NCBI RefSeq assembly: GCF_040938485.1
Contig: NW_027270909.1
Span: forward strand, 3,224,001-3,288,000
Direction: 5' to 3'
Length of the DNA stretch: 64,000 bases
DNA from: Diadema antillarum
Lineage: Eukaryota
Shown: in pieces, positions 19,804-56,400 of the stretch
How positions within the stretch are numbered: the stretch's first letter is position 1
Layout of the letters: every line of letters begins with the position of its first letter
Translations under genes and position numbers: made by a program
The notes under the pieces: generated by a model
The model's database searches: none
What the model was told of the DNA's origin: nothing
Seen by the model: only the letters and a program-made list of their open reading frames with translations

Positions 19804-19842
<39 letters not shown>

Positions 19843-19845
<3 letters not shown>

Positions 19846-22800
19846 GTCAGAATTTTGAACGATGTACAATTGAGCCAAAACAAGGCAAAATTTAAAAAGT
19901 AGGAAATTCTCCAAATTATTCATCTTACCTGAAAGAGTATAACTCAAGCTTTAATATGAACCCAATTATACTAGGATTTTCCCAGAGGAACAAGTTTTTA
20001 TTCACCGCTGAAGTTTACCATGTCCAGAGCAGCGAACGTCCGTGAGGAATAGTACAGCACATACACTTGAATACCATTTAACATAGTTTGCAAAGATCTG
20101 ATTCAGTTCAAAATCCTAACAAAATATCTTAAGGGACATGTGTACGTGCTTGCAGAATATTAAGCTTGTACTCTTAACCTGTACGTAATGGTAGACAACT
20201 GATGATTTAACTAAATTCGTCGTTTCTGTTGAAATATTGCTCTTCCGCTAAACACTTTCTCCACTTTACGCGCATTTTACAGAAACTCAATATTTTGTCC
20301 TCTTATTTCACAATCCCATACTTCAATCCCCACTCCCAAATAATAACATACCTTTTTAAGATGTATCTGATCTATGCAGTCTCTATAACCCAACGAACAT
20401 AGCATAGTTTTCATCACGGAGGTTCGCATGTAGCTCACGGACGTTCGGAACAAACAAGATGCAGCTCTCTTGAGTTGGAAACGCATTCTACTCACAACAA
20501 ACAGCAATTTCATGTCGAGAACAAACTCCTCTGCAAAATCCTGAAAAGATATTACCAATTCTTTATTATATAAGCTTGTTTATCTTCTCATACTGAGGAA
20601 TCAAAGGAAACAATTTTTTCCATCTCTCGTAAATGAACGTACAAACGTACGTGTAATCTCAGTGACGTAGTCCATCCTTGAGAACGAATATATATCAAAA
20701 TTTCGTTATCATGAAGTAAAGATTCAGGTCCTAAATTTGTTATCTAAAGTCTACAATGCAAAATTTGCTTATAACGAACATGGTCACAGCTAAAATTATG
20801 ACAAATAATTAACAGAGAAAGACAACAGGAATGTGCTGCGTTATAGAAATACGAAGTTTAGCTGGGGAGGGCAAACGAATACGTTGGGAAGAAATCCCTC
20901 TATGTTTGCTCCTTGTGTTACACACAGTTACCGAGGAGAGTTTGTATTATTATATTAGTCAGAAATGATAATAGGTTCGATACTGCGAAGTTTCTTCATA
21001 ACAAGACACAATAAGTCCATATTACTTGGATGGATGTTTGTTACTTCGATATTATACAATATGGTTTGTTATAACAAACATTTTGTAGCGCGTCATTTCG
21101 GAGGCTCGTTATTCATACAGTTTGTCAATACGAAAATTGATAGAGTTCTTATAATTATGAAGCTTTTTTATTCGGTAAATGATAGGAATCTCCGAAGGTT
21201 AATCGAAAGGTTTATTAATGGCAACATGAAAAATCATTTTCGCTTATCCAAATGTGGAGAAACAAGCAACTAAAATCCTCCAAATTTCAAAACCTCATAA
21301 TAACCGTTTTCACCTAAACGAATATCAGGCCCTTTCCACTTTTAGAAGAACGGACCTAAAATAATGATCCTTAATATTTATTTTTCGGACTAACAAACTT
21401 TCGGAATAAGAAAATCTTTAATAACAAACCTCCTTGATTAACTACAAACTTTTTTTTTTTATTTTCGGAATAACAAACCTTTGGACATCGGAGTAACGAA
21501 TCTTAGGAAGAGCGAACGTATCAAAGTGCAACCTTAAACCTATTCTTAATCATTACTTTTTTTAACATGTGTTTTCAAAGTAAGCACAAAAGCACAAACA
21601 AAATGACGATCTCTCTGTCTCTTAAATGTAAAATGAAAAAAAAAATCTTGGAAAGAATTACAAATGAACATTGCTTTTCATTGATGAGTATAAAACAACA
21701 CCATGTGATGATAAGCGGAGGATTTGTTTGTTTTCATCAGACAATAATTGTATACTGCATTATTTTTGTTCGCTTGTGACGGTATTTCGATGAATAAAAA
21801 AACATAAACAAACAAACAAAAACTTCTCCAGAGGAATTTGGTACAACGGGAGTGCACTGGCAATTCTTTTCTCTGTGTGTTGGAGCTCGATCCCTTCTCT
21901 GTTTCTCAGTCATTTTTATTCAACTGCTTCCACGTCCTTTTGAAACTTTTCCATTTTTTATTCAACACATGCCCATTACAGACTTCTTCCGTCATTATCC
22001 TGCATGTGATTACGTAGCACTTTTTGGATTTGTTTTGGTTTGTTTTGTTTTGTTTCTGTTTTCTGTTTGGTCGCAGCATGTCCAGGCTATTGAGGGAATG
22101 AGAGAAAAATCGTCATGAAGAGAAAAATAAGAATGAATTAAGGCATTTAATATCATGACAATTACAGCGAACGTCCGTTATGGAGGCCCAAACTGGATGT
22201 GTTCTGTTTGAGACGGCAGCTACCATACTCAAAAGATAAACACTTGGCGCACCTGTCACTAAAAAGTGGCACTGGTCCTCTTTCTCCTACTATGTAATCC
22301 ATGGACTTATTCTACCAACGAACATCCGTGACTAAAACGTTTTCCTGTTGTTATTACAAGTAAATTGAGTGCTGAACATTATTCACTTTTGGGTATGAGC
22401 GGCTCGGTGATTTGGTAATATTTTCAACTAACATTAACTTTATGTGCAGTGATATATTTGTAATTATCAGCAATTTCCTTTCTCGGACAGAACGTCCGTG
22501 AGCGAAACTTTCAGAACCTGTAACAGTACAAATTGTCTCCAGGTCCTCATTAGAAAGAAATTTAAATGCACAGAAATTACAGATTACGCAAAATTCCATT
22601 TTCCTATAACTTTGTTTTAAGTGTCTAGCTGTTTTTGTATAATTAGAGGGAAAACAAGAGTAAAATTGTGAGTAAATTTTCAACTGTTTCTTCATCATGA
22701 TCACATAACGCCTTAAAAATTCTGAAACTACTGCCCTAAACTCATTGTTTTCTTTGTAAAACTTTATTTGTGGCTATTGGAGCTAAAAGTTTTAAAGAAT

Positions 22801-23998
22801 ACAGGGCACTTTCGGGACAAGTTATCCCTATCGAAGGGATTGCATACGTCACGGACGTTCGCTGGAATTGTCACGGACGTTCGTTCTACTGATAGGGTCA
22901 TGTTCCCGGACGGATAACTAATCGGCAGAGAGTACCTAGCCTTCCTAACTCTTTCAGAAATTTGAAAAGGTATTGTCAATGCAAATTATAAGAAATTTGA
23001 CATCCTTACAACATATGTATTGCTCAGAGGGGACCAGGAGGTGAATTTTCAGAGAAAATATTAATTATTTGTTAGGTTTTCGGTGAATTGCATGGTCCAA
23101 AAACTGCGGACAAGCCTCAGTCCGCTCCAAAAATAACATACAGCTCCTCGGCTAGAGAGCCAAAGGTAAAATGCACCTTCGTCATCAAAGCAAGATGGTG
23201 TCCCACTCGAAAACGTTTTAATCATCACGGACGTTCTTTTTTTTCTCGGAGGTTCGTCTAAAAATATAATTTCGGTTCCTATTTGACAAAGGATGGACAG
23301 AAACTCAAAACAAACATATTATCGTGTGGCTAGATCTTAGTTGATTACGACTCAGAACAATATCACCAATAGCGTTTAATGGGATACGATCTATATTAGA
23401 AAACAGCGGAAGCACGTCCGTGACGAAAACTGAGTATAATTTTGCATAAAAGAATATTACGTCCCATGTACAGCCAGCAGACGTACAATTTTTGCAGGAT
23501 ATGTTCATTAGGTGGAACACCAAATTTTCGTATACATTACAGTTGGGACAACAAAGTAGAATTTGCAGCAGCGATAGAAATAAAAGCACCACGGACGTTC
23601 GTCTGTTTAGGACTTTGATATTTCAATTGTTCTCTGTGATTTTATACGTGCTCATAAAGTTCTTATAATTTTGTGGTTCATACTCATGATGTGTCAGATC
23701 CAGAATATGGTCAGATATTAGATGCCACGTACCATTAAAAATGCACATCATTAGTTTGAAAAACAAAAATTATTGTGAAAATAGCGTTTTTACCGTATTT
23801 TTACGCTTTAAGTCCTTGTCAAATGAAAAATATCAGGCAAAAGTTAACCAAACCATATATTTCCTGAAAGGAAATTTACCAATCTTTGAGATGACATGAA
23901 AAAATCTGGTTTCTTAGATCATCCTGGCGTGTTCTAAGGGAAAGAATGTCATAAGGTGCGAAAATTGGCAATTGTACATCGTTCAAAATTCTCACCCA
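19843..23998. mobile_element. 4.2-kb TA-flanked composite element with 30-bp TIRs (TGGGT.AGAATTTTGAACGATGTACAATTG) and nested repeats
   Basis: 19843-19872 and 23969-23998 are inverted. Absent from unit 1. No convincing transposase ORF inside. Confidence 0.65.
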
Positions 23999-24002
23999 TA
24001 TA

Positions 24003-24251
24003 TGAAGAGTTTGTTCGCAAAAACCGATAAGCCCACTTTTGAAGATTTTGAGGTACGGTCTCTGTCATAAAGTACAAAATAGTACCTTTTAAATGATATA
24101 TTGGTCACTACATATAAAGGTACATTTCTGAAGTTATGGTCAAAAGAAGCAAACATTTTCTTATCATTCTCTTTATTTTTCTTGACCTTTCATAGCAAAT
24201 ATCTCCATTTGGCAAATATGGACTTATCGGTTTTTGCGAACAAACTCTTTA
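24003..24251. mobile_element. Same MITE family as 6956-7203, opposite orientation
   Basis: The interior is the reverse complement of the unit-1 copy. TA flanks. Confidence 0.75.
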
Positions 24252-25858: not shown

Positions 25859-28828
25859 CCCTTATGGAACAAATACAGTGTTACTACACTGTGATCACCT
25901 AGTTAACTATGTGTAAAATGTGTGAGTATAGTGTGTTCACAGTGTTGCTACAGTGTGAAATTACAAATTATGTGGTTCACCACGTACAACTCACACAGTC
26001 ATACACAGTTACCACAGCTTACCACATAATGGTCAAAGGTGCGTTATATGCTGCAGTATGTGGGCATGGTGTGTTCATAGAGTTGTCATGGTAGGAATTT
26101 TCAGACTATGTGGTTAACCACAAACTTATCATATGGTGACATGCAGTTACCACATAACAGTCACAGTGTGTCACATATTGCAGTCTATGGGAATAGTGCC
26201 TCCACAAAGATGTCACAGTGTGAAACGATGGACTATGTGGTTTATTTCTTTCACAAAGTAGTATACAATTACCATAGCTTCCACATAATAGACACAGTGT
26301 GTAACATATTTCAGTCTGTGGGAAAGATGTGTTCACGTCAGAGCACAGTGTGTATTTAAAACTATGTGACTTACCACATTCTAAATCTGATGGAAATCAC
26401 AATTACCACAGCTTACCATAAAATGACCACAGTGTGTCACATACTGTAATATGTGAAATGTGTGTGCGCACAGAGTTGCCACAGTGTGGAATTCTAGTCT
26501 ATGTGGTTCTTCACCGAAAGTCACATAGTAAATCACAGTTGCTGCATCGTTTGCCACACAAAAACCACATTGTGTCACATATTGCAGTATGTGGCAATAT
26601 TGTGTCCGCCGAATTGTCACAGTGTAAAATTCTAGATCATTTGGTTTCTCACCCAGAAGTCACACAGTGAATCGTCATGTACTACAGTTTACCACAAAAT
26701 AACCACTGAACATGTCACATATGTGACCGTGCACCTCAAAACGAACATAAAGTCGCACACACTGATTTTGCGTGAGGACTGAAAATATGTGAAATGGGTC
26801 AACCTAGCTGAACTTGAATTTTTCATATTTTCTGAAAGAGCGGGTCTTCTTTTACATTATGCTAAAATTTGGTATCATAAAACGGGCAGGAAAGTGCGTC
26901 TTTTAGCAGTTTATCTCGAACATTTTTGGTAGAATAGTGTGATTAGGTGTGTCTTTAGAATCCCTTTTTCATTTCTGAAAAACCTTGTCCACATTCTTCA
27001 CTTTCAACTCTAATAACTTTTGAAAGGATAGTGCTCCTGCTTTGAAAGTTGGCATTAATTATGAACAGAATGTGTTAATGAGGCGTGCTTAATTTCAGTT
27101 CAATCTGATAATCCCTTCATTGTTGTTACTCTGGTGGTTTACTTCCTGTTTTTTATCCCATTCATCGCACAGCCAGCACGGTTTGGTAAAGATTAAGCGC
27201 TTGAATAGACACTGTACTTCAGAGCCTCTTTTCTCAGTTCACACTTTTCTTGAGTTTGTGCTTTCTTTCCAATATTTAGATAGGTTAGGAGAGTCCATTT
27301 GATTTGAGTTATACATCATTTTAAAGCTCAAAGTCTGCTCTTTCAGAATATAGTCTTAACTAAAAATTCATGTCTGGCGACTTTTTTGTTTGTTTTGAGG
27401 TGCAGGGTCACATATGTTGCAGCATGTTGAAATGTAGTGTTGCAGAAATGTCACAGTATCGACCGACCCGCAAGTGAATGGCGATGGGGTATGTCATTAA
27501 AATTGTGATAATAATATTGCCAGGGAAAACATTCATTCACTATTTGAACGCGACACAGGATATTCTTGTGGTATTTTGGAACATATGTAACAGGACAATA
27601 CCACACAGGAGTATCACACAGGAGGACCACACAGCAAAACCACATAGTACTCCATATCGCACAACAGCACATAACAATACTTAATACCACACAGCAATAA
27701 CGCAATAAAGGCAAAACCGCACAGAATACAGAAGAAGGTACCACAGAAAAATACCACAGGGTATTATTCTGGTTTTTTTTCTTGATATACTATACCACAG
27801 GACTATCACAAGACAATACAATGTACCACACAGCAGTACCAACTGGAATAGAATAACAAACAAAAAAAAACCACACATATATTTCAGAATTTAATTGACC
27901 AATGAATAATGCTAATAACAATTGATTTAAACCGTAATTAATCTGGCCTATCCTCCTACAGTACTACCTATTAAGTGAGAGTGCTGAGGTACAGTATGTG
28001 ATACTTCATGTGGTATTTCTGTGGTATTCCTATGGTATTGCTGTGGTACTCCTGTGATAACCCTGTGGCACAAATTTTTACATAGCTAATGAATATCCAT
28101 TAAAAACAATCAAAATTTTAGAAAATACATAAAAGACCTCTAATTTCAGAGTAGGCCTATTAATGATGGAACTTACTTTGAACTTTATTAAAGATTGTCT
28201 AATAATGTTATAATATTCCCAATGTCATAAATTTTGTTATGAAAGTGTTATTTCATATCTTGATAGTAAAGTAATGTCTAGTAAGTAACCATGCCTTAAT
28301 GCATTACGAATAGATGGCATATATGTACGTACTGATACACCCGATGACTAACTAGGAATAGGATGACTATAACAGGGGATCTGTGATTTAGGTCTAGAAT
28401 GGTAGTAGGCCGTATGAGTTGTTTGAGGTTATAATAAGAAGAAGGACAGGCTTTAAAGGTAGGGACATGTTTGTCCTGAAATTCATCACTCGCCTTAATA
28501 GGTAAATTCTTGTAATTCTTTTATGGCTATTGATTGTCCCAGATTTTTTTTTTTCCGACTGTGGTTGATAAAACAGAGTGAAAGATTGTGGTAGATAACA
28601 CAGTGTGAGAGACTGTGGTAGATAACACAGTATGGGATGCTTCATTTTGACATACTGTGTTACCTACCACAGTATCCACCCTGTGTTTTCCACAGTGTGA
28701 TAATAACAAAGCATTACCACATGTCTCAATTTCACAGATAACCATTGTGTGACATAACACACTGTGTTTCACACTGTGAATCACAGTGTGTTTTACTATG
28801 TGGCAACACTATGACTATTCAATAAGGG
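25859..28828. mobile_element. CMC/EnSpm-like non-autonomous element (CCCTTAT...ATAAGGG termini, ATG 3-bp TSD)
   Basis: TIR CCCTTAT.GAA...AGTGTT.C.ACA. ATG at 25856-25858 and 28829-28831. Many CACAGTGTG/CACACTGTG repeats. Confidence 0.65.
26722..27412. mobile_element. TGTGACC-terminus MITE nested in the CMC-like element
   Basis: TIR TGTGACC.TGCA.C.CAAAAC.AAC..AAAGTCGC with TA TSD. Empty site in unit 1 at ~9571-9585. Confidence 0.85.
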
Positions 28829-38149: not shown

Positions 38150-39010
38150 ACACACGGCGAAAATGCAAACATATACAATGATATACAATAAATGACAAGC
38201 ACTGAACAATTAGTTACAAAAGAAAAAGATATCAAAAAACACAAAGAGAAAATCGATATACTTCTATGGACACATAAGGGACTTCCGCTAACTTCATGAT
38301 CTCTTTGTAGAAACTCTTGATGTCACTATTTGTTCTTAAATGAACAGGAAGATTATTGAAAGTTTTACATGCAACATATGATGGGCTGTTTCGGACAAAA
38401 TTAGGACGAGGTTTTGGCATCACAATTTGAGCATTTGAGTTTTGTAGAGTGTAATTTTCAAAATGATCTGAGTTGAACACCAGAGGACAGAGTTGTTGGA
38501 GCAAGGTTATACAACAGTTTGAATATAAAGATTAAGGCTTGCTTTCCTCTTCTTTCTTTGAGTCGGTCGACCTGAAGAGAAGAATAAAGAGTTTCCCTAT
38601 TGTAACGCACCATTCTTAGGCATCTGTTCTGAATAACTTGCAATCGATTTGGTTGACCCGAGTGACCAGTCCTCCACATTACACTACAGTAGTCCAAATG
38701 GGGTTGGATTAGAGTTTTGTACAACAACAGGGGAGGTATCCTTATCAATGTTCTCTCTTGTATGCTTGACTGCATGAAAGACTTTAAGCGTTTTGCTTCT
38801 AACGTTTTCAATTTGTGGGGTCCATGTTAGGTTTTTCATCGAGAATGACCCCGAGATATCTGCAGTCTGAAACTCTTTGTAGATATAATATATTTCCATC
38901 AAGGATGACCAGGTACATCATGATAACACAAGAACGTTTTGTATATACTATGAAGAGTGTTATCGCAAAAAAAAAAGCTTACTCCACTTTTGTTAAGTTG
39001 AGATATCTCT
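38150..39010 (-). mobile_element. Degenerate 3' fragment of a CR1/L2-group LINE ORF2
   Basis: LYKTLIQPHLDYCSVMW, NRLQVIQNRCLRMV and FNNLPVHLR are split over three frames. Confidence 0.75.
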
Positions 39011-41264: not shown

Positions 41265-41399
41265 TAGATCAGTATTCGTTCCAAACCCTTAACTCTCTTT
41301 GCTCGTGTGGTCACAAGCTATAGTGTGTGTATGTGTGCCACACACACACACATTAACCTTTGTTAATGTTTTACTCTTTTTTTTGTCCGTTGCTCTCGA

Positions 41400-44300
41400 T
41401 TACATCGTGTGTTTCCATGGATATGTAGGGAGCGAAACAACTTCGTATGGGCCTTCTTGAAAGAGTTTATCATGTCCAATCTGAAAGCCCTCGACATGTA
41501 GCCTTGAGACTGACCTTAGAAGGTTGAACACATCATCTGAGAGTATATTGGTATCAGACGGTCTTTGCAAGGATCCTGTCACTACTACGTCATTAGTGCA
41601 AACCGTTGATGTTGTAGCCACTTCCTGAATGACGGGAGATAAAACTGGATGAGGACCGATTTGCAGGAAGAAATTGAATCCATCTTGCAGAAGTTTCTGA
41701 ATGGCAGTCATAAATTTTACCGGCTGTCGAACGTTCATCCACCAATACATAGCACTGTTGACTTCTCTAAAATCGGAGTAATTGCTTGTGACCGTTGAAA
41801 CAAGGGGAACATTCGGTGTCATGTTGGTAGTGTGTTTCTCCTCAGAGAATTTTAGAAACTCTAATTTCGACAACAAAGACTCACGTATCTCTTCCTGTTG
41901 GAAGCTGTGGAAACCGTTGTTGACGTTGAGCATCTTACACTTTATTCCCTGTTCTCGAAGATTCGCTGTGAATTCATCTAGTGCCTTATAACCTCCTGCC
42001 AAGACTATTTCTGTCGGGCTGTTAACTGCTGCAATATCGATTTCACTATCGTATCGACTGTTCTTCAGGCGTGTTTCGATATCTTCAACGTCATGCAATA
42101 TGGCTACCATCGTACCAATGCCATATGTCTTATTCAGCTCACGCCCTCTAATGTATATGAGACGAACAGCATCATCAAGAGTCAAGTGCCCGGCGGCATG
42201 AGCTGCGGCCACCTCGCCGACGCTCTGCCCCACGATTGCATCTGGGCAGATTCCCCGAGAGCGGTAGTATTCAGTCAACCCAACTTGGACAGCAAAGAGG
42301 GAGGGTTGTGCAACATCTGAAAACGTTTTAAAGGTAAGTAGAAGCAGCAGATTAGTTATTCGGTGTGCCTAAGACTACTGATTGTTATCCACGCGTCATC
42401 TCTTGTTAGTTTGCTTGTTTTGTATACCCGCAAGAAACAAGAAACATTATCTAATTATACTTTTATTTAATATTAGCGAATTAGTTTTACTGCACACGCA
42501 CAGCACTCACTCACATCTTCCTTTTCACTCTAACGCGTGATATTGCAATATCAAACAAATAAAACTACTTTCGGTGAGGGGCAAACCTGAGTAACAATGA
42601 CGCCATAAGCCCAGTCAAGCCATATGCTTATGATGATGGTCTCATGCTTCCTTAATGAATCCTATGTACTGCTTTTTTTCTGTATTATTACGCAATTATA
42701 GATGTTTTACAAAACATTAGTTGTGTACGTAGTATAAACTGCACTTTTGTCATATTCTCCTTCGCCATTTGGTTGTTTTTTCAATCGTCACACTCATGAA
42801 ATTAGTTTTGATTTGATTTGATTTTGAGCAGATACGAACTGAATTATTATAAGAAAGCTGAATCAGCCTTAAAATAAATCAAAGTGATACAATTTGAAAA
42901 GAACATTTGTTTATTTGACCTGATTATATCAAATTGAGGAACAATAACATCGCTTTTGAGACTTATTACCACTGACCTGTTTGGTTTATTTTCTCTTGGT
43001 CATCTTCATCCGTCAAGAGGTGTACCAGTGACCACGTTGCTCCACATCTTGTAAGTATTTTGTCAATGTTCTATCATCGGAAAAAAAGCAAAAGCAAAAA
43101 CAACAACAGCAAAAATGTATATTTATATAAACTGGAAAACTCTTACACTTTTCCGAAAAAGGAGGAACAGTGAAAGGAAAGCTACGCACTGTTTTTCCTT
43201 CTTTTCTCATTATATCACTTATAAATATATACATATTATGTATATAATATGGCTTATCGAAGACAAACTGGTAATCTTTCTGGCAAGATAACATAATTCA
43301 AGGCGTATTCGAATTCGTCAGTGGAATCAATATAGTAGAGATAAGAGAAATAGAACAGAAAGAAGGAAAGGACAGAAAGAATAAATTCGATGATTTGAGA
43401 ATACCTGTATGACACTGCGGAATTTCGGTTCTTCTGCCATGAGACGACGAGCCATTCCCCGCCACTGGGAGCCCATCCCGGGGTAGACGAAGACCAAGCG
43501 ACGAACTGGAATGCTCGTATCCCCAGCCTGGCCCTCTATGACAGTAGTAGCGGCTTTGACATCTTGTTGGAGTTTAAGTCTGATCTGGTTCCTTGCATCA
43601 CTTGGGGATCTTATGATGATACCCACGCGATGGTCGAGATGGCTGGACCGTACACCTGCAGTGTACAATGCGTTTTTATACAAAATCTCGTCATCTCTTA
43701 TTACTTCTGCCATAAAGGCTTCCCACTTCTGGAGGTATTGAGCGAGTGCGTCCCTGCTTGCTGCCGATAGGAACAAAACTGACGGTTTCTCTGTGACTTT
43801 CCCATTAAAAAGTTGTGTTTGTCTGTTTCTAGGTTCAAAACCTTCCAGAACTATGTGAGCATTGGCACCATCGAAACCAAATGAACTGCAACCAATCAAC
43901 TGCTTGGCCCCACTTGGCCATTTAGTAATTTCCGTTGAAACACACAGGTTCAAGGGTGAAAGGTCGACGTTCTCATTTCCTTTACTGAACTGTACTTGCT
44001 TTGAAATCTTTTTGTTTTGCAAGCTTAGTGCAGCCTTGATTACACCAGCTACGCCAGCTGCTGCATCGGCATGGCCAAAATTTGTCTTTAAGGATCCAAG
44101 GAACAGCGGAGTTTGATCTGACCGACGTATGAATCCCAAAGCTTCACCTATAGCATTGGCGCCTGATGCGTCCCCGGCACTAGTACCGGTACCGTGCAGG
44201 TCGAGGAACGCTACGTCTTCAGGGTTGACTTTGGCATCACCGCACGCCTTTTTGAGGAGGGCAATCTGTGCTTCATAACTAGACTGACCGATTCCAGACG

Positions 44301-45875
44301 TTCGACCGTCGTTAGAGAACGTTCCTCCCCGAATGACCGCGTAAACCCTGTCTCCATCCTCAATGGCCCGTTTCAATGGCCTGAGAACGACAGCCCCTAC
44401 ACCTTCCCCACGACAGCGGGCCGAGTCATCAAATGTTTTGCCTTTCCCTTCTTGGGCGTCATCGTCGCCCTGAGAGAAAATGCTTGTCCCACCTGCTACA
44501 GCCATGTCACACTCGCCTTTCCTCAGTGCTTTCCATGCAAGGAGAATTGCATCCAGAGATGACGAGCACGCTTTGTTCACCGTCAAGCTAAGTCCACGAA
44601 AGTTGTACTCATACGATATTCTATTTGATACCATATGTGACCCTGCATCACAAAACAAACAGAAAGTCGCCAGGCATAAAACTTTAGCTAAGAGCATATT
44701 CTGAAAGAGCAGACTTTAATCTTTAAAATGATGTATAACTCAAACCAAATGGACTCTCCTACCCTATCTAGATATTGGAAAGCAGGCACACACTCAGGAA
44801 AAGGGTGAACTGAGAAAAGATGCTCTGAAGTACAGTGTCTATTCAAGGGCTTAATCTTTACCAAAGCCGTGCTGCCTGTGCGATGAATGGTTAGTTATAG
44901 GAGTTGAAAGTGAAGAGTGTGTACAAGGTTTCTCAGAAATGAAAAGGAGACTGTAAAGAAACATTAAATCACACTTTTCTGCAAAAAAAAAAAAACAATG
45001 TTCGAGATAAACTGCTAAAAAACACTTTCCTGCCCGTTTTATGATCCCAAATTTTAGCATAATGTAGAAGAAAACTTGCTGTTTCAGAAAAGATGAAAAA
45101 GTCAAGATCGGCTCGGTTGACCCATTTCACCTATTTTCAGTGCTCACACAAAATCAGTGTGCGACTTTTGGTTCGTTTTGTGATGCACGGTCACATAATG
45201 TGAATTACCACTATTTTTGGTGTACAGAATGACAACGTCCGTAGGAACTCCAATAAGGAGGCTGAACTCACTCGCAGCCATGCCCATATACACTCCGATG
45301 GTCGATCCACGTACCGACTGGGCTGGTATTTCTGCGTCTTGAAGGGATTCCCAAACCACTTCGAGAAGGATCCGAACCTGTGGATCCATTTTGTTTGCCT
45401 CTTCTGGAAATGGAGAAAAAAAAAACAGAACATGAAATATGTAACGTAAGCTGCAATTGGACACCCAGGCTCTAAAGTTAATTTGCATTGCATTAGTAAA
45501 GTAAAGAAATCCTTTTAGTTTGTCGCAGAGACTGGCCGAAATACGTCCTAACGGAGAAAAACATATCCCCCTGCACCTCTAAAAGAATAAGATACCTGGA
45601 GATATTTTGAAGAATTCTCTGTCCAAGTATTCTTGATCCTTTTTGAGGTATCCAGCACACTTGTACTTCTTCCAGGGACACTTCTCACCAGGGGAAACGT
45701 AGGACACCTCGTCAGAGGGTTCGGGAGGGATAGATGTTGTGCAGTCCATGCCCTTGTCAAGCACATCCCAGAACCTGTAGACACTGTTAATGCTGTCGGC
45801 GAATCGACATCCGATGCCAACGATGGCGACCTTGCCATCGACCGACATCGTTGGGTCGGTTAAGGAGTCCGTCAT
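41400..45875 (-). CDS. Type I PKS/FAS-like KS-AT gene, truncated after the AT (predicted exons 45875-45596, 45403-45209, 44642-43405, 43070-42977, 42316-41400; 907 aa); functional didomain or decaying pseudogene
   Basis: KS motifs VAIVGIGCRF, MDPQVRILLEV, ACSSS, HGTGT, KTNFGH, SSFGF. AT motifs VFVYPGMGSQW, QPSLFAVQ, GQSVGE, GFHS, IGPHPVL. Post-AT linker LPTYPW followed by TAA. All four proposed introns are GT-AG with matching phases. Confidence 0.8.
44636..45195. mobile_element. TGTGACC-terminus MITE inserted in the PKS KS coding sequence
   Basis: Same TIRs and interior as 26722-27412 and 58139-58824. TA flanks. Confidence 0.85.
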
Positions 45876-48889: not shown

Positions 48890-49275
48890 ACTGTCTGGTA
48901 TGTTTTGGATGACTGGAGCATAAACAGGTGATAAAAGGCCTGTCTAGTATGTTTTGGGACGACTAGAGCATAAATAAGTGATGAATGGCCTGTCTGGTAT
49001 GTTTTGGGATAACTGGAGCATGAATAGGGGATAAAAGGCCTGTCTGGTATGTTTTGGATGACTGGAGCATGAATAGGGGATAAAAGGCCTGTCTGGTATG
49101 TTTTGGTATGACTGGAGCATAGGTAGGTCATAAGATGACTGCCTGGTATGTTTTGGGATGGCTGGAGCATAAATAAGTGACAAAAGGCCTGTCTGGTATG
49201 TTTTGGGACGACTGGAGCATAAATAGGCGACAAAAGGCTGGTCCGGTATATTTTAGGATAACTGGACCATACTGG
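48890..49275. repeat. ~50-bp minisatellite, ~7.5 copies
   Basis: Unit approximately GGCCTGTCTGGTATGTTTTGGGATGACTGGAGCATAAATAGGTGATAAAA. Confidence 0.9.
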
Positions 49276-53428: not shown

Positions 53429-56400
53429 CAAGTTTCAAGTTTCAAGTTTCTTTATTTCACCAAGCAAAGAAGATATAAAAACAAACAAACACATACAACA
53501 ACATTAGAATACAATTACAAAATATCAGTTAAACAGTGTAAAAGGAATTGCTGTGGTAGGCAGCAGCCAGAAAGGAAATGTCCCTTATTTTCGGCTGACC
53601 TAAAAACATACGTTAAATTTCTGTTACCAATGTGTTCGAAGCAAGTAAAACATAAGAACAAGACAAGACTAAGACATAGCAATCAACACACAAAGACAAT
53701 AACAAACACCTGATGTCTCAAAACGTAAAGGGTAAAAACTGATACTCTAACTTAAATGAATTTGGTTGTCATTATTGAAGAGAATTTTTTTTATAACCAG
53801 ACTTAAATATATTCAATGAGTTAGCATTGCGTATTTCAAAGGGGAGAGAATTCCACAGAATAGGACCACTGTAAAGAATAGATCGTTGATAAAAAGATGT
53901 ACGAGATAGAGGTAGGTGAAAATCACTCGCGGTTCGCGTATTGTAATTATGAATTTGATTATTGTATGTGAAAAAGTCCAAAAGAGTTTTTGGTAATATA
54001 AAGTTCTTACATAAATACATAAAAATCCCCACTTGGTATTTATACATATCATTCAATTGCAATATTTTCAGGGATAAAAAGAGTGGTGGGGTATGGGCAA
54101 GATAAGAGGCATGGGCAATGATTCGCATTGCACGTTTTTGAAGTAGTAATAGTCTTTGAATATGACATTCATGAGCATTACCCCAAACAATTATTCCATA
54201 ATACAAATAAGGTAAAATTATAGCACTATAAATTGATTTCAAAACAGAATTTGGGAGAAAACTAAGTTTGTACATTACACCAATATTTTTTGATAATTTA
54301 TTACAAATATAATTAATATGATTTGACCAATTCAACTTATTGTCTACAAAAACTCCAAGAAATTTCAGTGAGGAAACTTGCATGATTTGAGAACCACACA
54401 TATTAATAGATACAGTATCAATGTTAATTTTTTTTCTTTGTAAATATCATAAAATTAGTTTTTGATATATTGATTAATAATTTGTTCATTCGCAGCCAAC
54501 TTGTAACATATTGCAATTCCTTATTAAAAACCTCTTGTAAAGAATCCATATTATCATGAGACAAAAATATACTTGTGTCATCGGCAAATAAAATGCATTG
54601 TAAAATATTAGAAACATTCGGCAAATCATTTATATATAAAAGAAATAAAATAGGCCCAAGGATCGATCCCTGGGGCACTCCACATCTTATGTTTTTATAT
54701 TCAGAAACATTCTTATCAATTGATACAAACTGCTTACGGTTACTCAAATAACTTTTAAAAAGATTTAAAATAACTCCACGAATACCATACTGATCTAATT
54801 TAGCTAAAAGAATATTATGATCAAGCGTGTCAAATGCTTTGCTCAGGTCTAAAAATAAGCCCAGTAAAATTTTCCCGTTGTCTATTGCACAGATCACCTT
54901 ATGAATGAAATCAATCAATGCAGAAGATGTGGAGTGCCCCGGTCTAAATCCATACTGATTTTTCTTAATAATATTGCACTTTGTCAGAAATTGAATAAGC
55001 CTAGTGGAAATACATTTTTCAAAAACTTTGGAGAAAACGGATAAAACTGATATTGGGCGATAATTTGTCATTAAATCAGGGGAACCACTTTTAAAAACTG
55101 GTACTACTCTTGCGATCTTCATTTTATCTGGAAAAGTACCAGATTCCATGCACTGATTGAATATTGCACATAAAGGTTTACATATCAAATGAACAGCTCT
55201 TTTCACAATTCGCATATCAATATTATCGTATCCAGCACTGACATCATTCTTAAAAGTGGTTACAACATCAATTATCTCTTTACAAGTAATTGGTTTAAAA
55301 AATGCAGTTGGCTCAACTTTTGTAACATATTGAAGATAATCATACTCATCTGAAACATCAAAAGATGAATTAATATCGCAACCAATATTAACAAAATATG
55401 TATTTAACAAATTACAAATCTCTTTCTCATTTATAATTGTTTCATTGTTACACTTAATAGATTTAATGGTTGTTCTCTTATTGCACTTTTTCCCTAAGGC
55501 ATTATTTATCACATCCCATGTCTTTTTACTATTCCCATTACTATCAGCTAACTTTTTCTCATAATATTTCTTTTTAGCTAATTTTATCATATTAGTCACT
55601 TTATTTCGATATTTCTTATAAAGAGTTTTACGGTAATCATTTGGATTCTTTTTATACAATTTATACATTTTACATTTTTTCCTTATTAATTTACGAATAT
55701 AATTTGTACACCATACATTATCATTTTTCCTTCGTTTTCCACAAACTGAAATCAACGGAAATGATTCATTATATTTGTCAGTAATTAAATCAAACAAATT
55801 ATCAAAACTAATATTACCATCATTTTTATCATATTCCCATGACGTCGATTCCAGTGACCGTAAAATATATACAATATTATTTTCATTTGTATCTCTCCTC
55901 ATTTGTCTTTGTTGACTTTAAACAATGAAATTACACTTTTACAAATACAATATACCGGGAAATGATCTGATATATCAGTTAAAATAATTCCAGAGTGGAT
56001 CTTACAAGAATCATTCGTAAAAATGTTGTCAAGTAATGAAGCGGAAGAGTCAGTGACACGTGTGGGATAATGAACCAAAGGTAACATAGAATTCAATAAT
56101 AGCAAATCCAAAAATTCATTTACATATTGCACACACCCTATTTTAAGCAAATCAATATTAAAATCGCCCATTAGATAAAAACATTTCTTTTCCTTTTTAA
56201 CAATATCTAAAATATCATTCAAAGACTCACAAAATTCATTAACTGACTTGTTGGGTGGTCTATACACAACACATATCAAAGTAGAAGTATTGCAATTTGT
56301 TATTTCTATAAATATACTCTCAAAAAAATCAGTGTTAATATCAAGATCGCATCGGCGATTAAAAGAGATATCTTTATGTACATTAAACCCAACACCTCCT

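What the first reader, a model, noticed from the sequence alone, without database searches (positions are those of the whole stretch)
44636..45209. MITE inside the KS exon can be spliced out in frame (possible transposon-born intron)
Seen: a 560-bp TGTGACC MITE splits the conserved ...NSG-NS/H-MVSNRISY motif. The empty TA site reconstructs with one extra base. A host donor AGTG|GTAATT (45208) lies 12 nt before the insertion. The MITE's own TIR supplies a pyrimidine-rich acceptor TTTCTGTTTGTTTTGTGATGCAG|GG (44643). Both are phase 1, so removing the 566-nt segment gives ...YTKNSGSHMVSNRISY with no frameshift. The same acceptor-like TIR is present in the copies at 27412 and 58824. Inference: an intron gain or exon rescue, with a family pre-adapted to intronisation.
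Basis: partly seen in the sequence, partly recalled or inferred. Interest (0 to 1): 0.75.

Follow-up and report, generated by a model that had tools for sequence, protein, structure and literature searches.

The report
Transposon inside a decaying PKS exon
A small DNA transposon really does sit inside the ketosynthase exon of a sea-urchin polyketide synthase gene and could be spliced out in frame on paper, but the host gene is a truncated copy evolving almost neutrally, so this is most likely an ordinary disruptive insertion, not a proven new intron.

Summary
A 560-bp TA-flanked MITE (44636-45195) splits the KS exon of a minus-strand PKS gene in Diadema antillarum. The TA empty site is +1 out of frame.

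- All ten paralogous loci read straight through the site, so any splicing here would be an intron gain.
- The gene is a 3'-truncated KS-AT remnant. It has in-frame KS core deletions and altered motifs.
- The same insertion lies on the second retained haplotig (C2).
- KS exons differ between haplotigs at omega 0.6-0.9, against 0.12-0.18 for functional paralogs.
The window's model (P0121) removes 563 nt, possible only as a non-U12 AT-AC intron. The C2 model (P0001) uses a larger GT-AG intron that drops the active-site cysteine.
- 59 in-frame, stop-free GT...AG pairs exist around the element. The acceptor lies inside the predicted TIR stem.

Transposon-made introns are already documented, including in the sea urchin S. 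purpuratus. RNA data, not available here, would decide. Another note of this scan (s1-220866) reports a MITE supplying splice signals elsewhere in this genome; I did not check it.

The parts
44636..45195 (-). 560-bp non-autonomous DNA transposon (MITE), an internally deleted copy of a ~692-bp family. Its GCAG|GGTCACA end is at the 3' side relative to the PKS gene.
45196..45197 (-). upstream TA target-site duplication
44634..44635 (-). downstream TA target-site duplication; with the next G it forms the ATG codon of MVSNRISY
45198..45198 (-). extra T relative to the in-frame ancestral site inferred from paralogs (TCACA-TA-TGG); shared by both haplotigs
44637..45199 (-). 563-nt segment removed in NCBI's model of this gene (P0121). 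This is the only one of 7 equivalent placements with accepted termini (AT...AC).
45270..45271 (-). alternative host donor GT (CGA|GTGAGT), used in NCBI's model of the other haplotig
44529..44530 (-). alternative host acceptor AG (GGAAAG|CA) of the other haplotig's model; using it removes the KS active-site cysteine
45596..45875 (-). PKS exon 1 (start codon, KS N-terminus)
45198..45403 (-). PKS exon 2: the upstream half of the ancestral single KS exon
43405..44634 (-). PKS exon 3: the downstream half of the ancestral KS exon (active-site Cys, both His, linker, start of AT)
42977..43070 (-). PKS exon 4 (AT N-terminal piece)
41400..42316 (-). PKS exon 5 (AT domain, then a stop two codons after homology to paralogs ends); identical on both haplotigs

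Best explanation
A 2-bp-TSD (mostly TA), Tc1/mariner-like MITE inserted, in sense orientation, into what was a single ~490-codon KS exon. The host is a side copy of the Diadema antillarum type I PKS family. That copy keeps only KS-AT: homology to full-length paralogs stops two codons before its stop codon, and the DH-KR-ACP part is missing. It also carries in-frame deletions in the KS core and changes in conserved motifs. The insertion is old enough to lie on both haplotypes retained in the assembly. Since those haplotypes split, the KS exons have changed at nearly the neutral rate, and one haplotype has also gained a frameshift. The most likely reading is an ordinary disruptive insertion in a gene remnant under relaxed constraint. 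Shown: the anatomy, the absence of an ancestral intron, the truncation, the relaxed constraint, and the annotation junctions. Inferred: that no splice form yields a selected, working protein.
For: MITE anatomy and family. Paralogs uninterrupted at the site. Truncation: paralogs have a ~1,900-aa last exon with PS-DH and KR, with no such hit on C21 or C2, and homology ends at ...LPTYPWKH. Shared degeneration: 9-aa and 2-aa deletions between AGG and RGEG, GFGG>GFDG, GHSVG>GQSVG, and 48 of 275 paralog-invariant residues changed. Same MITE on C2, colinear for >13 kb. The assembly retains both haplotypes (PMC13511894). Omega for C21 versus C2: exon 3 gives 0.63 (NG86), 0.84 (ML) and 0.91 (YN00); exons 2-4 give 0.77 with Nd 31.5 and Sd 12.5. 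This is not different from neutral (P=0.32) and rejects omega 0.16 (P=3e-7). Control paralog and allele pairs give 0.12-0.18. Derived replacements at invariant sites occur in both haplotypes, 11 in C21 and 14 in C2. The acceptor lies within the predicted TIR stem.
Against: The window's copy has no stop or frameshift in 908 codons apart from the insertion. If the gene had been dead since an insertion dated by the element's 5.6% distance from the family consensus, about 6 new stops would be expected (P~0.002). That clock is soft, and with only post-split time P is 0.19. Exons show 1 indel against ~19 expected from the introns, though the introns are low-complexity. Exon 1 has omega 0.19, and exon 5 has no difference at all between the haplotigs. 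The C2 frameshift rests on one haplotig of an assembly with about one error per 28 kb. P0001's odd canonical intron inside the AT exon suggests that RNA-seq reads exist for the locus.
Confidence: 0.58

Rival explanations
1. One reading: the pre-mRNA is spliced from the host donor at 45208 to the TIR acceptor at 44643. This removes 566 nt, yields ...NSGSHMVSN..., and keeps a KS-AT protein in frame. It would be an intron born from a MITE.
For: The junction is in frame and stop-free and costs only one residue. The pair ranks second of 59 in a rough score, and its donor and acceptor score like the gene's real sites. No paralog has an intron here. The catalytic Cys and both His are intact, and the ORF is unbroken in the window copy. 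Introners that carry the 3' site and borrow the 5' site from host sequence are documented (PMC9860276), also in a sea urchin (PMC12130899).
Against: NCBI's RNA-seq-aware pipeline chose other junctions on both haplotigs. The C2 haplotig is out of frame with this junction. KS exons evolve near-neutrally. The acceptor and its T-rich tract are predicted to be base-paired in the TIR stem. The gene lacks everything after AT.
Confidence: 0.12
2. A new intron exists but starts at the stronger host donor GTGAGT (last exon base 45272). It ends either at the TIR acceptor (first exon base 44642) or at the host AG used in P0001 (first exon base 44528). The element, the extra T and the C2 frameshift would then all be intronic, and both haplotypes would stay in frame. 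With the distal acceptor the KS loses its active-site cysteine.
For: P0001 uses 45272>44528 on C2 and stays in frame into the AT domain. Both pairs are in frame and stop-free in the window, and 45272>44642 has the best rough score. This model explains why a frameshift at 45240 is tolerated while no other frameshift or stop occurs on either haplotig. It also fits a KS that drifts.
Against: Gnomon may have chosen that intron only to keep an ORF. The window's own model does not use it. The AT N-terminal part in exons 3 and 4 is not conserved between the haplotigs. There are no RNA data here.
Confidence: 0.18
3. The mRNA implied by P0121 (an exact ...TCACAT|ATGG... join) is not a splicing product. 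It could reflect protein-guided alignment. It could reflect reverse-transcriptase template switching across the TIR hairpin between the 6-nt direct repeats TCACAT. It could also reflect reads from individuals whose allele lacks the element.
For: The 563-nt removal has no GT-AG placement. Only AT-AC fits, and the U12 signals are absent (and direct reading of the sequence). The join falls in a 6-nt direct repeat at the base of a predicted 37-bp stem, which is the classic setting for RT jumps (my own knowledge). It exactly recreates the paralog-length sequence.
Against: An empty allele still segregating is unlikely, because the two MITE-bearing haplotypes already differ by 3% within the element. 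The other options cannot be told apart without reads. This rival concerns the annotation and can coexist with any of the others.
Confidence: 0.12

Closest known systems
Introners: intron-generating DNA transposon families (Huff et al. 2016, from my own knowledge; Gozashti et al. 2022, PMC9860276; 2025, PMC12130899, which includes S. purpuratus)
   Same: It is a non-autonomous TIR/TSD element inside a coding exon. A 3' splice-site-like AG with a T-rich tract lies in its terminus, a 5' site could be borrowed from neighbouring exon sequence, and relatives lack an intron at that position.
   Different: There is no evidence that copies of this family serve as introns in many genes. Removal does not restore the mRNA exactly (-3 nt). 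The element lacks a usable donor. Splicing is unverified, and the host gene looks unconstrained.
Transposon insertions in exons that are partly spliced out through cryptic sites (maize Ds/dSpm alleles of wx, bz and adh1; Wessler, Purugganan; from my own knowledge)
   Same: Host and element cryptic sites could combine to remove most of an exonic DNA transposon, giving an in-frame but altered product.
   Different: Those cases were shown by cDNA, whereas here the sites are only predicted. This is an old insertion that is homozygous in the sequenced animal, not a fresh mutant allele.
Stowaway-like / Tc1-mariner MITEs
   Same: It is short (560-700 bp), has 35-nt TIRs, has a TA duplication at this copy and most sampled copies, occurs in thousands of copies and does not code for a transposase.
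   Different: About a quarter of sampled copies show TT or AA instead of TA. No autonomous partner was sought, so the superfamily assignment is provisional.
Sea-urchin type I PKS genes (Pks1/Pks2-type animal PKS)
   Same: The KS and AT domains are recognised by Pfam, the catalytic Cys-His-His triad is present, and the exon layout matches at least 6 distinct full-length paralogs in the same genome.
   Different: The gene is truncated after AT, has KS core deletions, shows GQSVG in place of GHSVG, and its KS exons evolve at near-neutral omega.

Membership tests
MITE (non-autonomous TIR DNA transposon) | Terminal inverted repeats | tested here: met
   37-nt arms including TA, 89% complementary
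MITE (non-autonomous TIR DNA transposon) | Target-site duplication | tested here: met
   TA on both sides at the KS copy. Among 32 sampled copies: 12 TA/TA, 7 TT/TT, 2 AA/AA.
MITE (non-autonomous TIR DNA transposon) | High copy number of similar short elements | tested here: met
   7100 first-look candidates, and all 40 scored matched. Sampled copies lie 3.5-8% from the consensus.
Tc1/mariner superfamily | Related autonomous element with a DDE/D transposase and the same TIRs | not tested
   No search for an autonomous partner was made.
Introner family | Element removed from mRNA by the spliceosome | not testable with these tools
   There is no read-level RNA data. No transcript-like fragment of this gene is in the protein collection.
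Introner family | Many sequence-similar copies that are introns of unrelated genes | not tested
   This needs the GCF_040938485.1 annotation, which could not be reached here.
Introner family | Intron position absent from homologues | tested here: met
   All 10 paralogous loci read through the site in one open frame.
Introner family | Splice sites carried or co-opted so that the mRNA is restored or changed by whole codons | tested here: inconclusive
U12-type AT-AC intron (needed for NCBI's P0121 junction) | 5' ATATCCTT-like site and TCCTTAAC-like branch site | tested here: not met
   The intron would start ATTATGTG and end ...GATGCAGGGTCAC, with no branch-site motif (and sequence).
Functional type I PKS module | KS catalytic Cys and two His | tested here: met
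   NKACSSS, LHGTGT and NFGHA are present.
Functional type I PKS module | Carrier protein and downstream domains in the same gene | tested here: not met
   There is no PS-DH or KR hit on C21 or C2, while paralogs have them in the same exon. Homology ends at the stop.
Functional type I PKS module | Purifying selection on the coding sequence | tested here: not met
   KS exons give omega 0.63-0.91, against 0.12-0.18 in paralogs. Exon 1 and exon 5 behave differently.

The most novel reading that the evidence does not exclude
A generic MITE that is not a specialised introner has created a working spliceosomal intron in a sea-urchin PKS gene. It would pair a host exon donor with an acceptor that is part of its own TIR, and it would be caught while the two haplotypes still differ in how well they tolerate it. 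The family's conserved GCAG TIR end would then make one insertion orientation systematically less harmful in exons.
Probability: 0.15. Interest if true: 0.55.

Novelty: new member of a known kind. Interest (0 to 1): 0.3.

Why it matters
If the element is truly spliced, this would be a dated, single-locus example of intron birth from an ordinary MITE in a deuterostome. Uninterrupted paralogs in the same genome would serve as built-in controls. That is useful but not new in kind, because intron-generating transposons are already described in many eukaryotes, including S. purpuratus. As it stands, the main practical lesson concerns annotation. In this uncollapsed diploid assembly the same disrupted locus received two different protein models. 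One relies on an implausible AT-AC intron and the other deletes the active site, so both should be treated with caution.

Tried and rejected
- I looked for transcript-derived fragments spanning the junction with the stored protein piece P0121:100-230. Only distant relatives (<=44% identity) came back.
- I considered a third donor copy to explain the identical AT exon and rejected it, because the next best match is 71%.
- I considered that C21 might be the constrained allele and C2 the dead one. I rejected this because derived changes at invariant sites are about equal, 11 versus 14.
- I considered a U12 reading of the AT-AC intron and rejected it on the missing motifs.
- I considered a MITE-free allele as the source of the P0121 mRNA and judged it unlikely, given 3% divergence between the two MITE-bearing haplotypes.
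- My first consensus alignment of family copies mixed orientations. I redid it with direction adjustment.
- Searching the scan's notes by sequence gave nothing.
Exons were searched one by one by reference. Joined products were only translated inside scripts to check frames.
- The large representative search, structure prediction and complex prediction were not used, because the family scans left nothing open.

Full report
**What is there**

The window is G000:C21:3224001-3288000 of a 1.75-Gb, 2,963-contig assembly. Protein hits name the organism as Diadema antillarum. The assembly size and contig count match GCA/GCF_040938485.1.

A type I PKS gene lies on the minus strand. Its exons are:
- E1 45875-45596
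- E2 45403-45198
- E3 44634-43405
- E4 43070-42977
- E5 42316-41400, including the stop

Pfam finds ketoacyl-synt N and C, the KS C-terminal extension and Acyl_transf_1 in the exons, searched one by one.

A 560-bp element sits between E2 and E3.
- It has 35-nt TIRs plus a TA on each side.
- It has two full-length relatives in the window and thousands in the genome.
- Thirty-two sampled copies show a 2-bp duplication, mostly TA.
- The KS copy is 5.6% from the consensus of those copies and lacks 138 central nt.

Removing the element and one TA leaves ...TCACAT-TA-TGG..., which is +1 and runs into a stop. The GT at 45208 and the AG at 44643 remove 566 nt and give ...YTKNSGSHMVSNRISY.

The frame match itself is not remarkable. 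Within about 100-130 nt of the element, 59 of 306 GT/AG pairs are in frame and stop-free. The top pair uses the same acceptor with the upstream donor CGA|GTGAGT.

**No ancestral intron**

Exon-wise searches of the genome found ten paralogous loci, some of them haplotig pairs. In each, one open frame runs from EEANHMDPQ through the site (...YTNTGTNSCMISNRISY...). In eight of the ten it continues for about 490 codons to the donor. The other two frames break downstream of the site.

The paralogs have the same length across the site as ...YTKNSGNSHMVSNRISY. The ancestral sequence was therefore TCACA-TA-TGG, and the T at 45198 is extra.

**The host gene is a remnant**

In the paralogs the AT exon continues as a ~1,900-aa open frame carrying PS-DH and KR. 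Here, homology stops at ...LPTYPWKH, two codons before a stop, and unrelated sequence follows. Neither C21 nor C2 has a DH or KR hit.

Relative to six paralogs, the copy shows these changes:
- It has lost 9 and 2 residues between AGG and RGEG in the KS core.
- It reads GFDG for GFGG.
- It reads NKAC for NTAC.
- It reads GQSVG for GHSVG.
- It differs at 48 of 275 residues that are invariant in the paralogs.

The catalytic Cys and both His remain.

**A second copy with the same insertion**

C2:6.452 Mb is colinear with the window for more than 13 kb at 92-99% identity. It carries the same element, extra T included, at the same place, 3.1% diverged. The published analysis of this very assembly concludes that it retains both haplotypes: 84.4% duplicated BUSCOs and a haploid size of ~0.7-0.9 Gb (PMC13511894). 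C2 and C21 are therefore most likely alleles of one animal. I cannot exclude a young segmental duplication.

C2 also has a 1-bp deletion in E2 (window-equivalent 45240). The assembly has about one error per 28 kb, so this deletion should be checked in the reads.

**Selection since the haplotypes split**

| Comparison | Result |
|---|---|
| E3, C21 vs C2 | omega 0.63 (NG86), 0.84 (ML), 0.91 (YN00) |
| E2-E4, C21 vs C2 | Nd 31.5, Sd 12.5, omega 0.77 |
| Test against neutrality | compatible, P=0.32 |
| Test against omega 0.16 | rejected, P=3e-7 |
| Same exon in functional paralogs, incl. one allele-like pair | omega 0.12-0.18 |
| Fisher test against that allele-like pair | P=0.005 |

Using paralogs as outgroup, derived replacements fall on both haplotypes, 11 in C21 and 14 in C2. 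Many hit invariant residues, for example P>L in HGPS, C>W, and W>R in GSQWWG on C21. So the window's allele is not the protected one.

**Signals that point the other way**

- The window's 908 codons have no stop or frameshift. If the element's 5.6% distance from the consensus dated the insertion and the gene had been dead since, about six stops would be expected (P~0.002). With only post-split time, P=0.19.
- Exons E1-E4 have one indel, against ~19 expected from the introns and the element. Much of that non-coding DNA is low-complexity, so the contrast is overstated.
- E1 gives omega 0.19 on seven changes.
- E5 has not one difference in 947 nt between the haplotigs, while intron 4 differs by 4.9% and the 3' flank by ~1.3%. 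No third copy could have converted both. The AT part encoded in E3 and E4 is not conserved, so I leave this unexplained.

**What the public annotation does**

NCBI's model of the window's gene, P0121 (908 aa), matches the window exons exactly and reads ...NSGNSH|MVSN.... That needs a 563-nt removal. Because TCACAT is repeated on both sides, there are seven equivalent placements. None is GT-AG or GC-AG; one is AT...AC. The U12 donor and branch motifs are absent, so I do not regard it as a credible intron.

It may come from one of three sources:
- protein-guided alignment;
- reverse-transcriptase jumps between the 6-nt repeats at the foot of the predicted TIR stem;
- less likely, reads from an allele lacking the element.

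The C2 model, P0001 (688 aa), instead joins ...GVYMGMAA to TLRKGECD.... It runs from GTGAGT (45272) to GGAAAG|CA (44528) and deletes the active-site cysteine. It also uses a canonical GTGAGT...CAG intron inside the AT exon that shifts the frame. That choice is hard to explain without RNA-seq support, so the locus is probably transcribed. The annotation was made with RNA-seq, but I could not see the reads.

**Structure**

The pre-mRNA segment folds with the two TIRs paired (MFE -163.7 kcal/mol, z -2.8). This places the candidate acceptor and its T-rich tract inside the stem. Such pairing could bring the ends together, but it could also hide the acceptor.

**Comparison with what is known**

Transposons that create introns, called introners, are well documented. 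They include families that carry the 3' site and take the 5' site from the duplication or from neighbouring exon sequence (PMC9860276). Recently active ones have been validated in the sea urchin S. purpuratus (PMC12130899). Partial splicing of exonic DNA transposons through cryptic sites is classic in maize (my own knowledge).

The family's GCAG end is conserved in 27 of 32 copies, but it is simply part of the TIR. The other TIR has CAC at the same place, so only one orientation offers an AG. That makes an orientation test meaningful, but I could not run it without the annotation.

**Verdict**

The structure is real. Intron gain is possible but unproven. The weight of evidence favours a disruptive insertion in a truncated, weakly constrained or unconstrained PKS remnant, about 0.58.

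Exons were searched separately, and the database models were used by id.

Noticed in passing
window 41377-42322 (exon 5 of the PKS gene) versus C2:6455914-6456827: There are zero differences in 947 nt between the two haplotigs. The tract ends within 7 nt and 24 nt of the exon ends, while the flanks differ by 4.9% and ~1.3%. No third near-identical copy exists in the genome.
   Followed up: partly
window 41626-41882, minus strand (equivalent on C2): NCBI's C2 model P0001 uses a canonical GTGAGT...CAG intron inside the AT exon. It shifts the frame and ends the protein at ...SGYNINGLH. The sequence is identical in the window, whose own model does not use it.
   Followed up: partly
window 19822-24003, and C2 just downstream of the PKS stop (window-equivalent ~41096): A 4.2-kb repeat, 94% identical to window 19822-24003, is inserted in the C2 haplotig about 300 bp after the PKS stop and is absent at that place in the window. 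It looks like a transposon insertion that differs between the two haplotigs.
   Followed up: no
window 48891-49271: A tandem array with a period of about 50 bp has a different copy number on the two haplotigs; C2 shows staggered self-matches over ~900 bp.
   Followed up: no
L013 (C346:1067330-1070533) versus L014 (C1084:683594-686797): This is the closest KS paralog in the exon-2 protein search (68% identity). Its two haplotig copies are 99.7% identical, but one has its KS open frame cut to 198 aa while the other runs to 528 aa. It is another PKS allele that may be broken.
   Followed up: no
genome-wide; L014-L036: At least six or seven full-length PKS paralogs exist, each seen on two contigs (C63 with C581 or C1337, and C211 with C398). 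They share one exon layout and a single ~1,900-aa last exon carrying AT-DH-KR.
   Followed up: partly
L037-L056, L002-L010: About a quarter of sampled MITE copies are flanked by TT/TT or AA/AA rather than TA/TA. One TIR carries G and the other C at position 8 in nearly all copies.
   Followed up: partly
Four related stretches in the window match the C2 copy of this region at 87-90% identity.
   Followed up: no
window 38458-38811 (-) and 53772-54401 (-): These ORFs resemble the C-terminal part of non-LTR retrotransposon reverse transcriptases.
   Followed up: no
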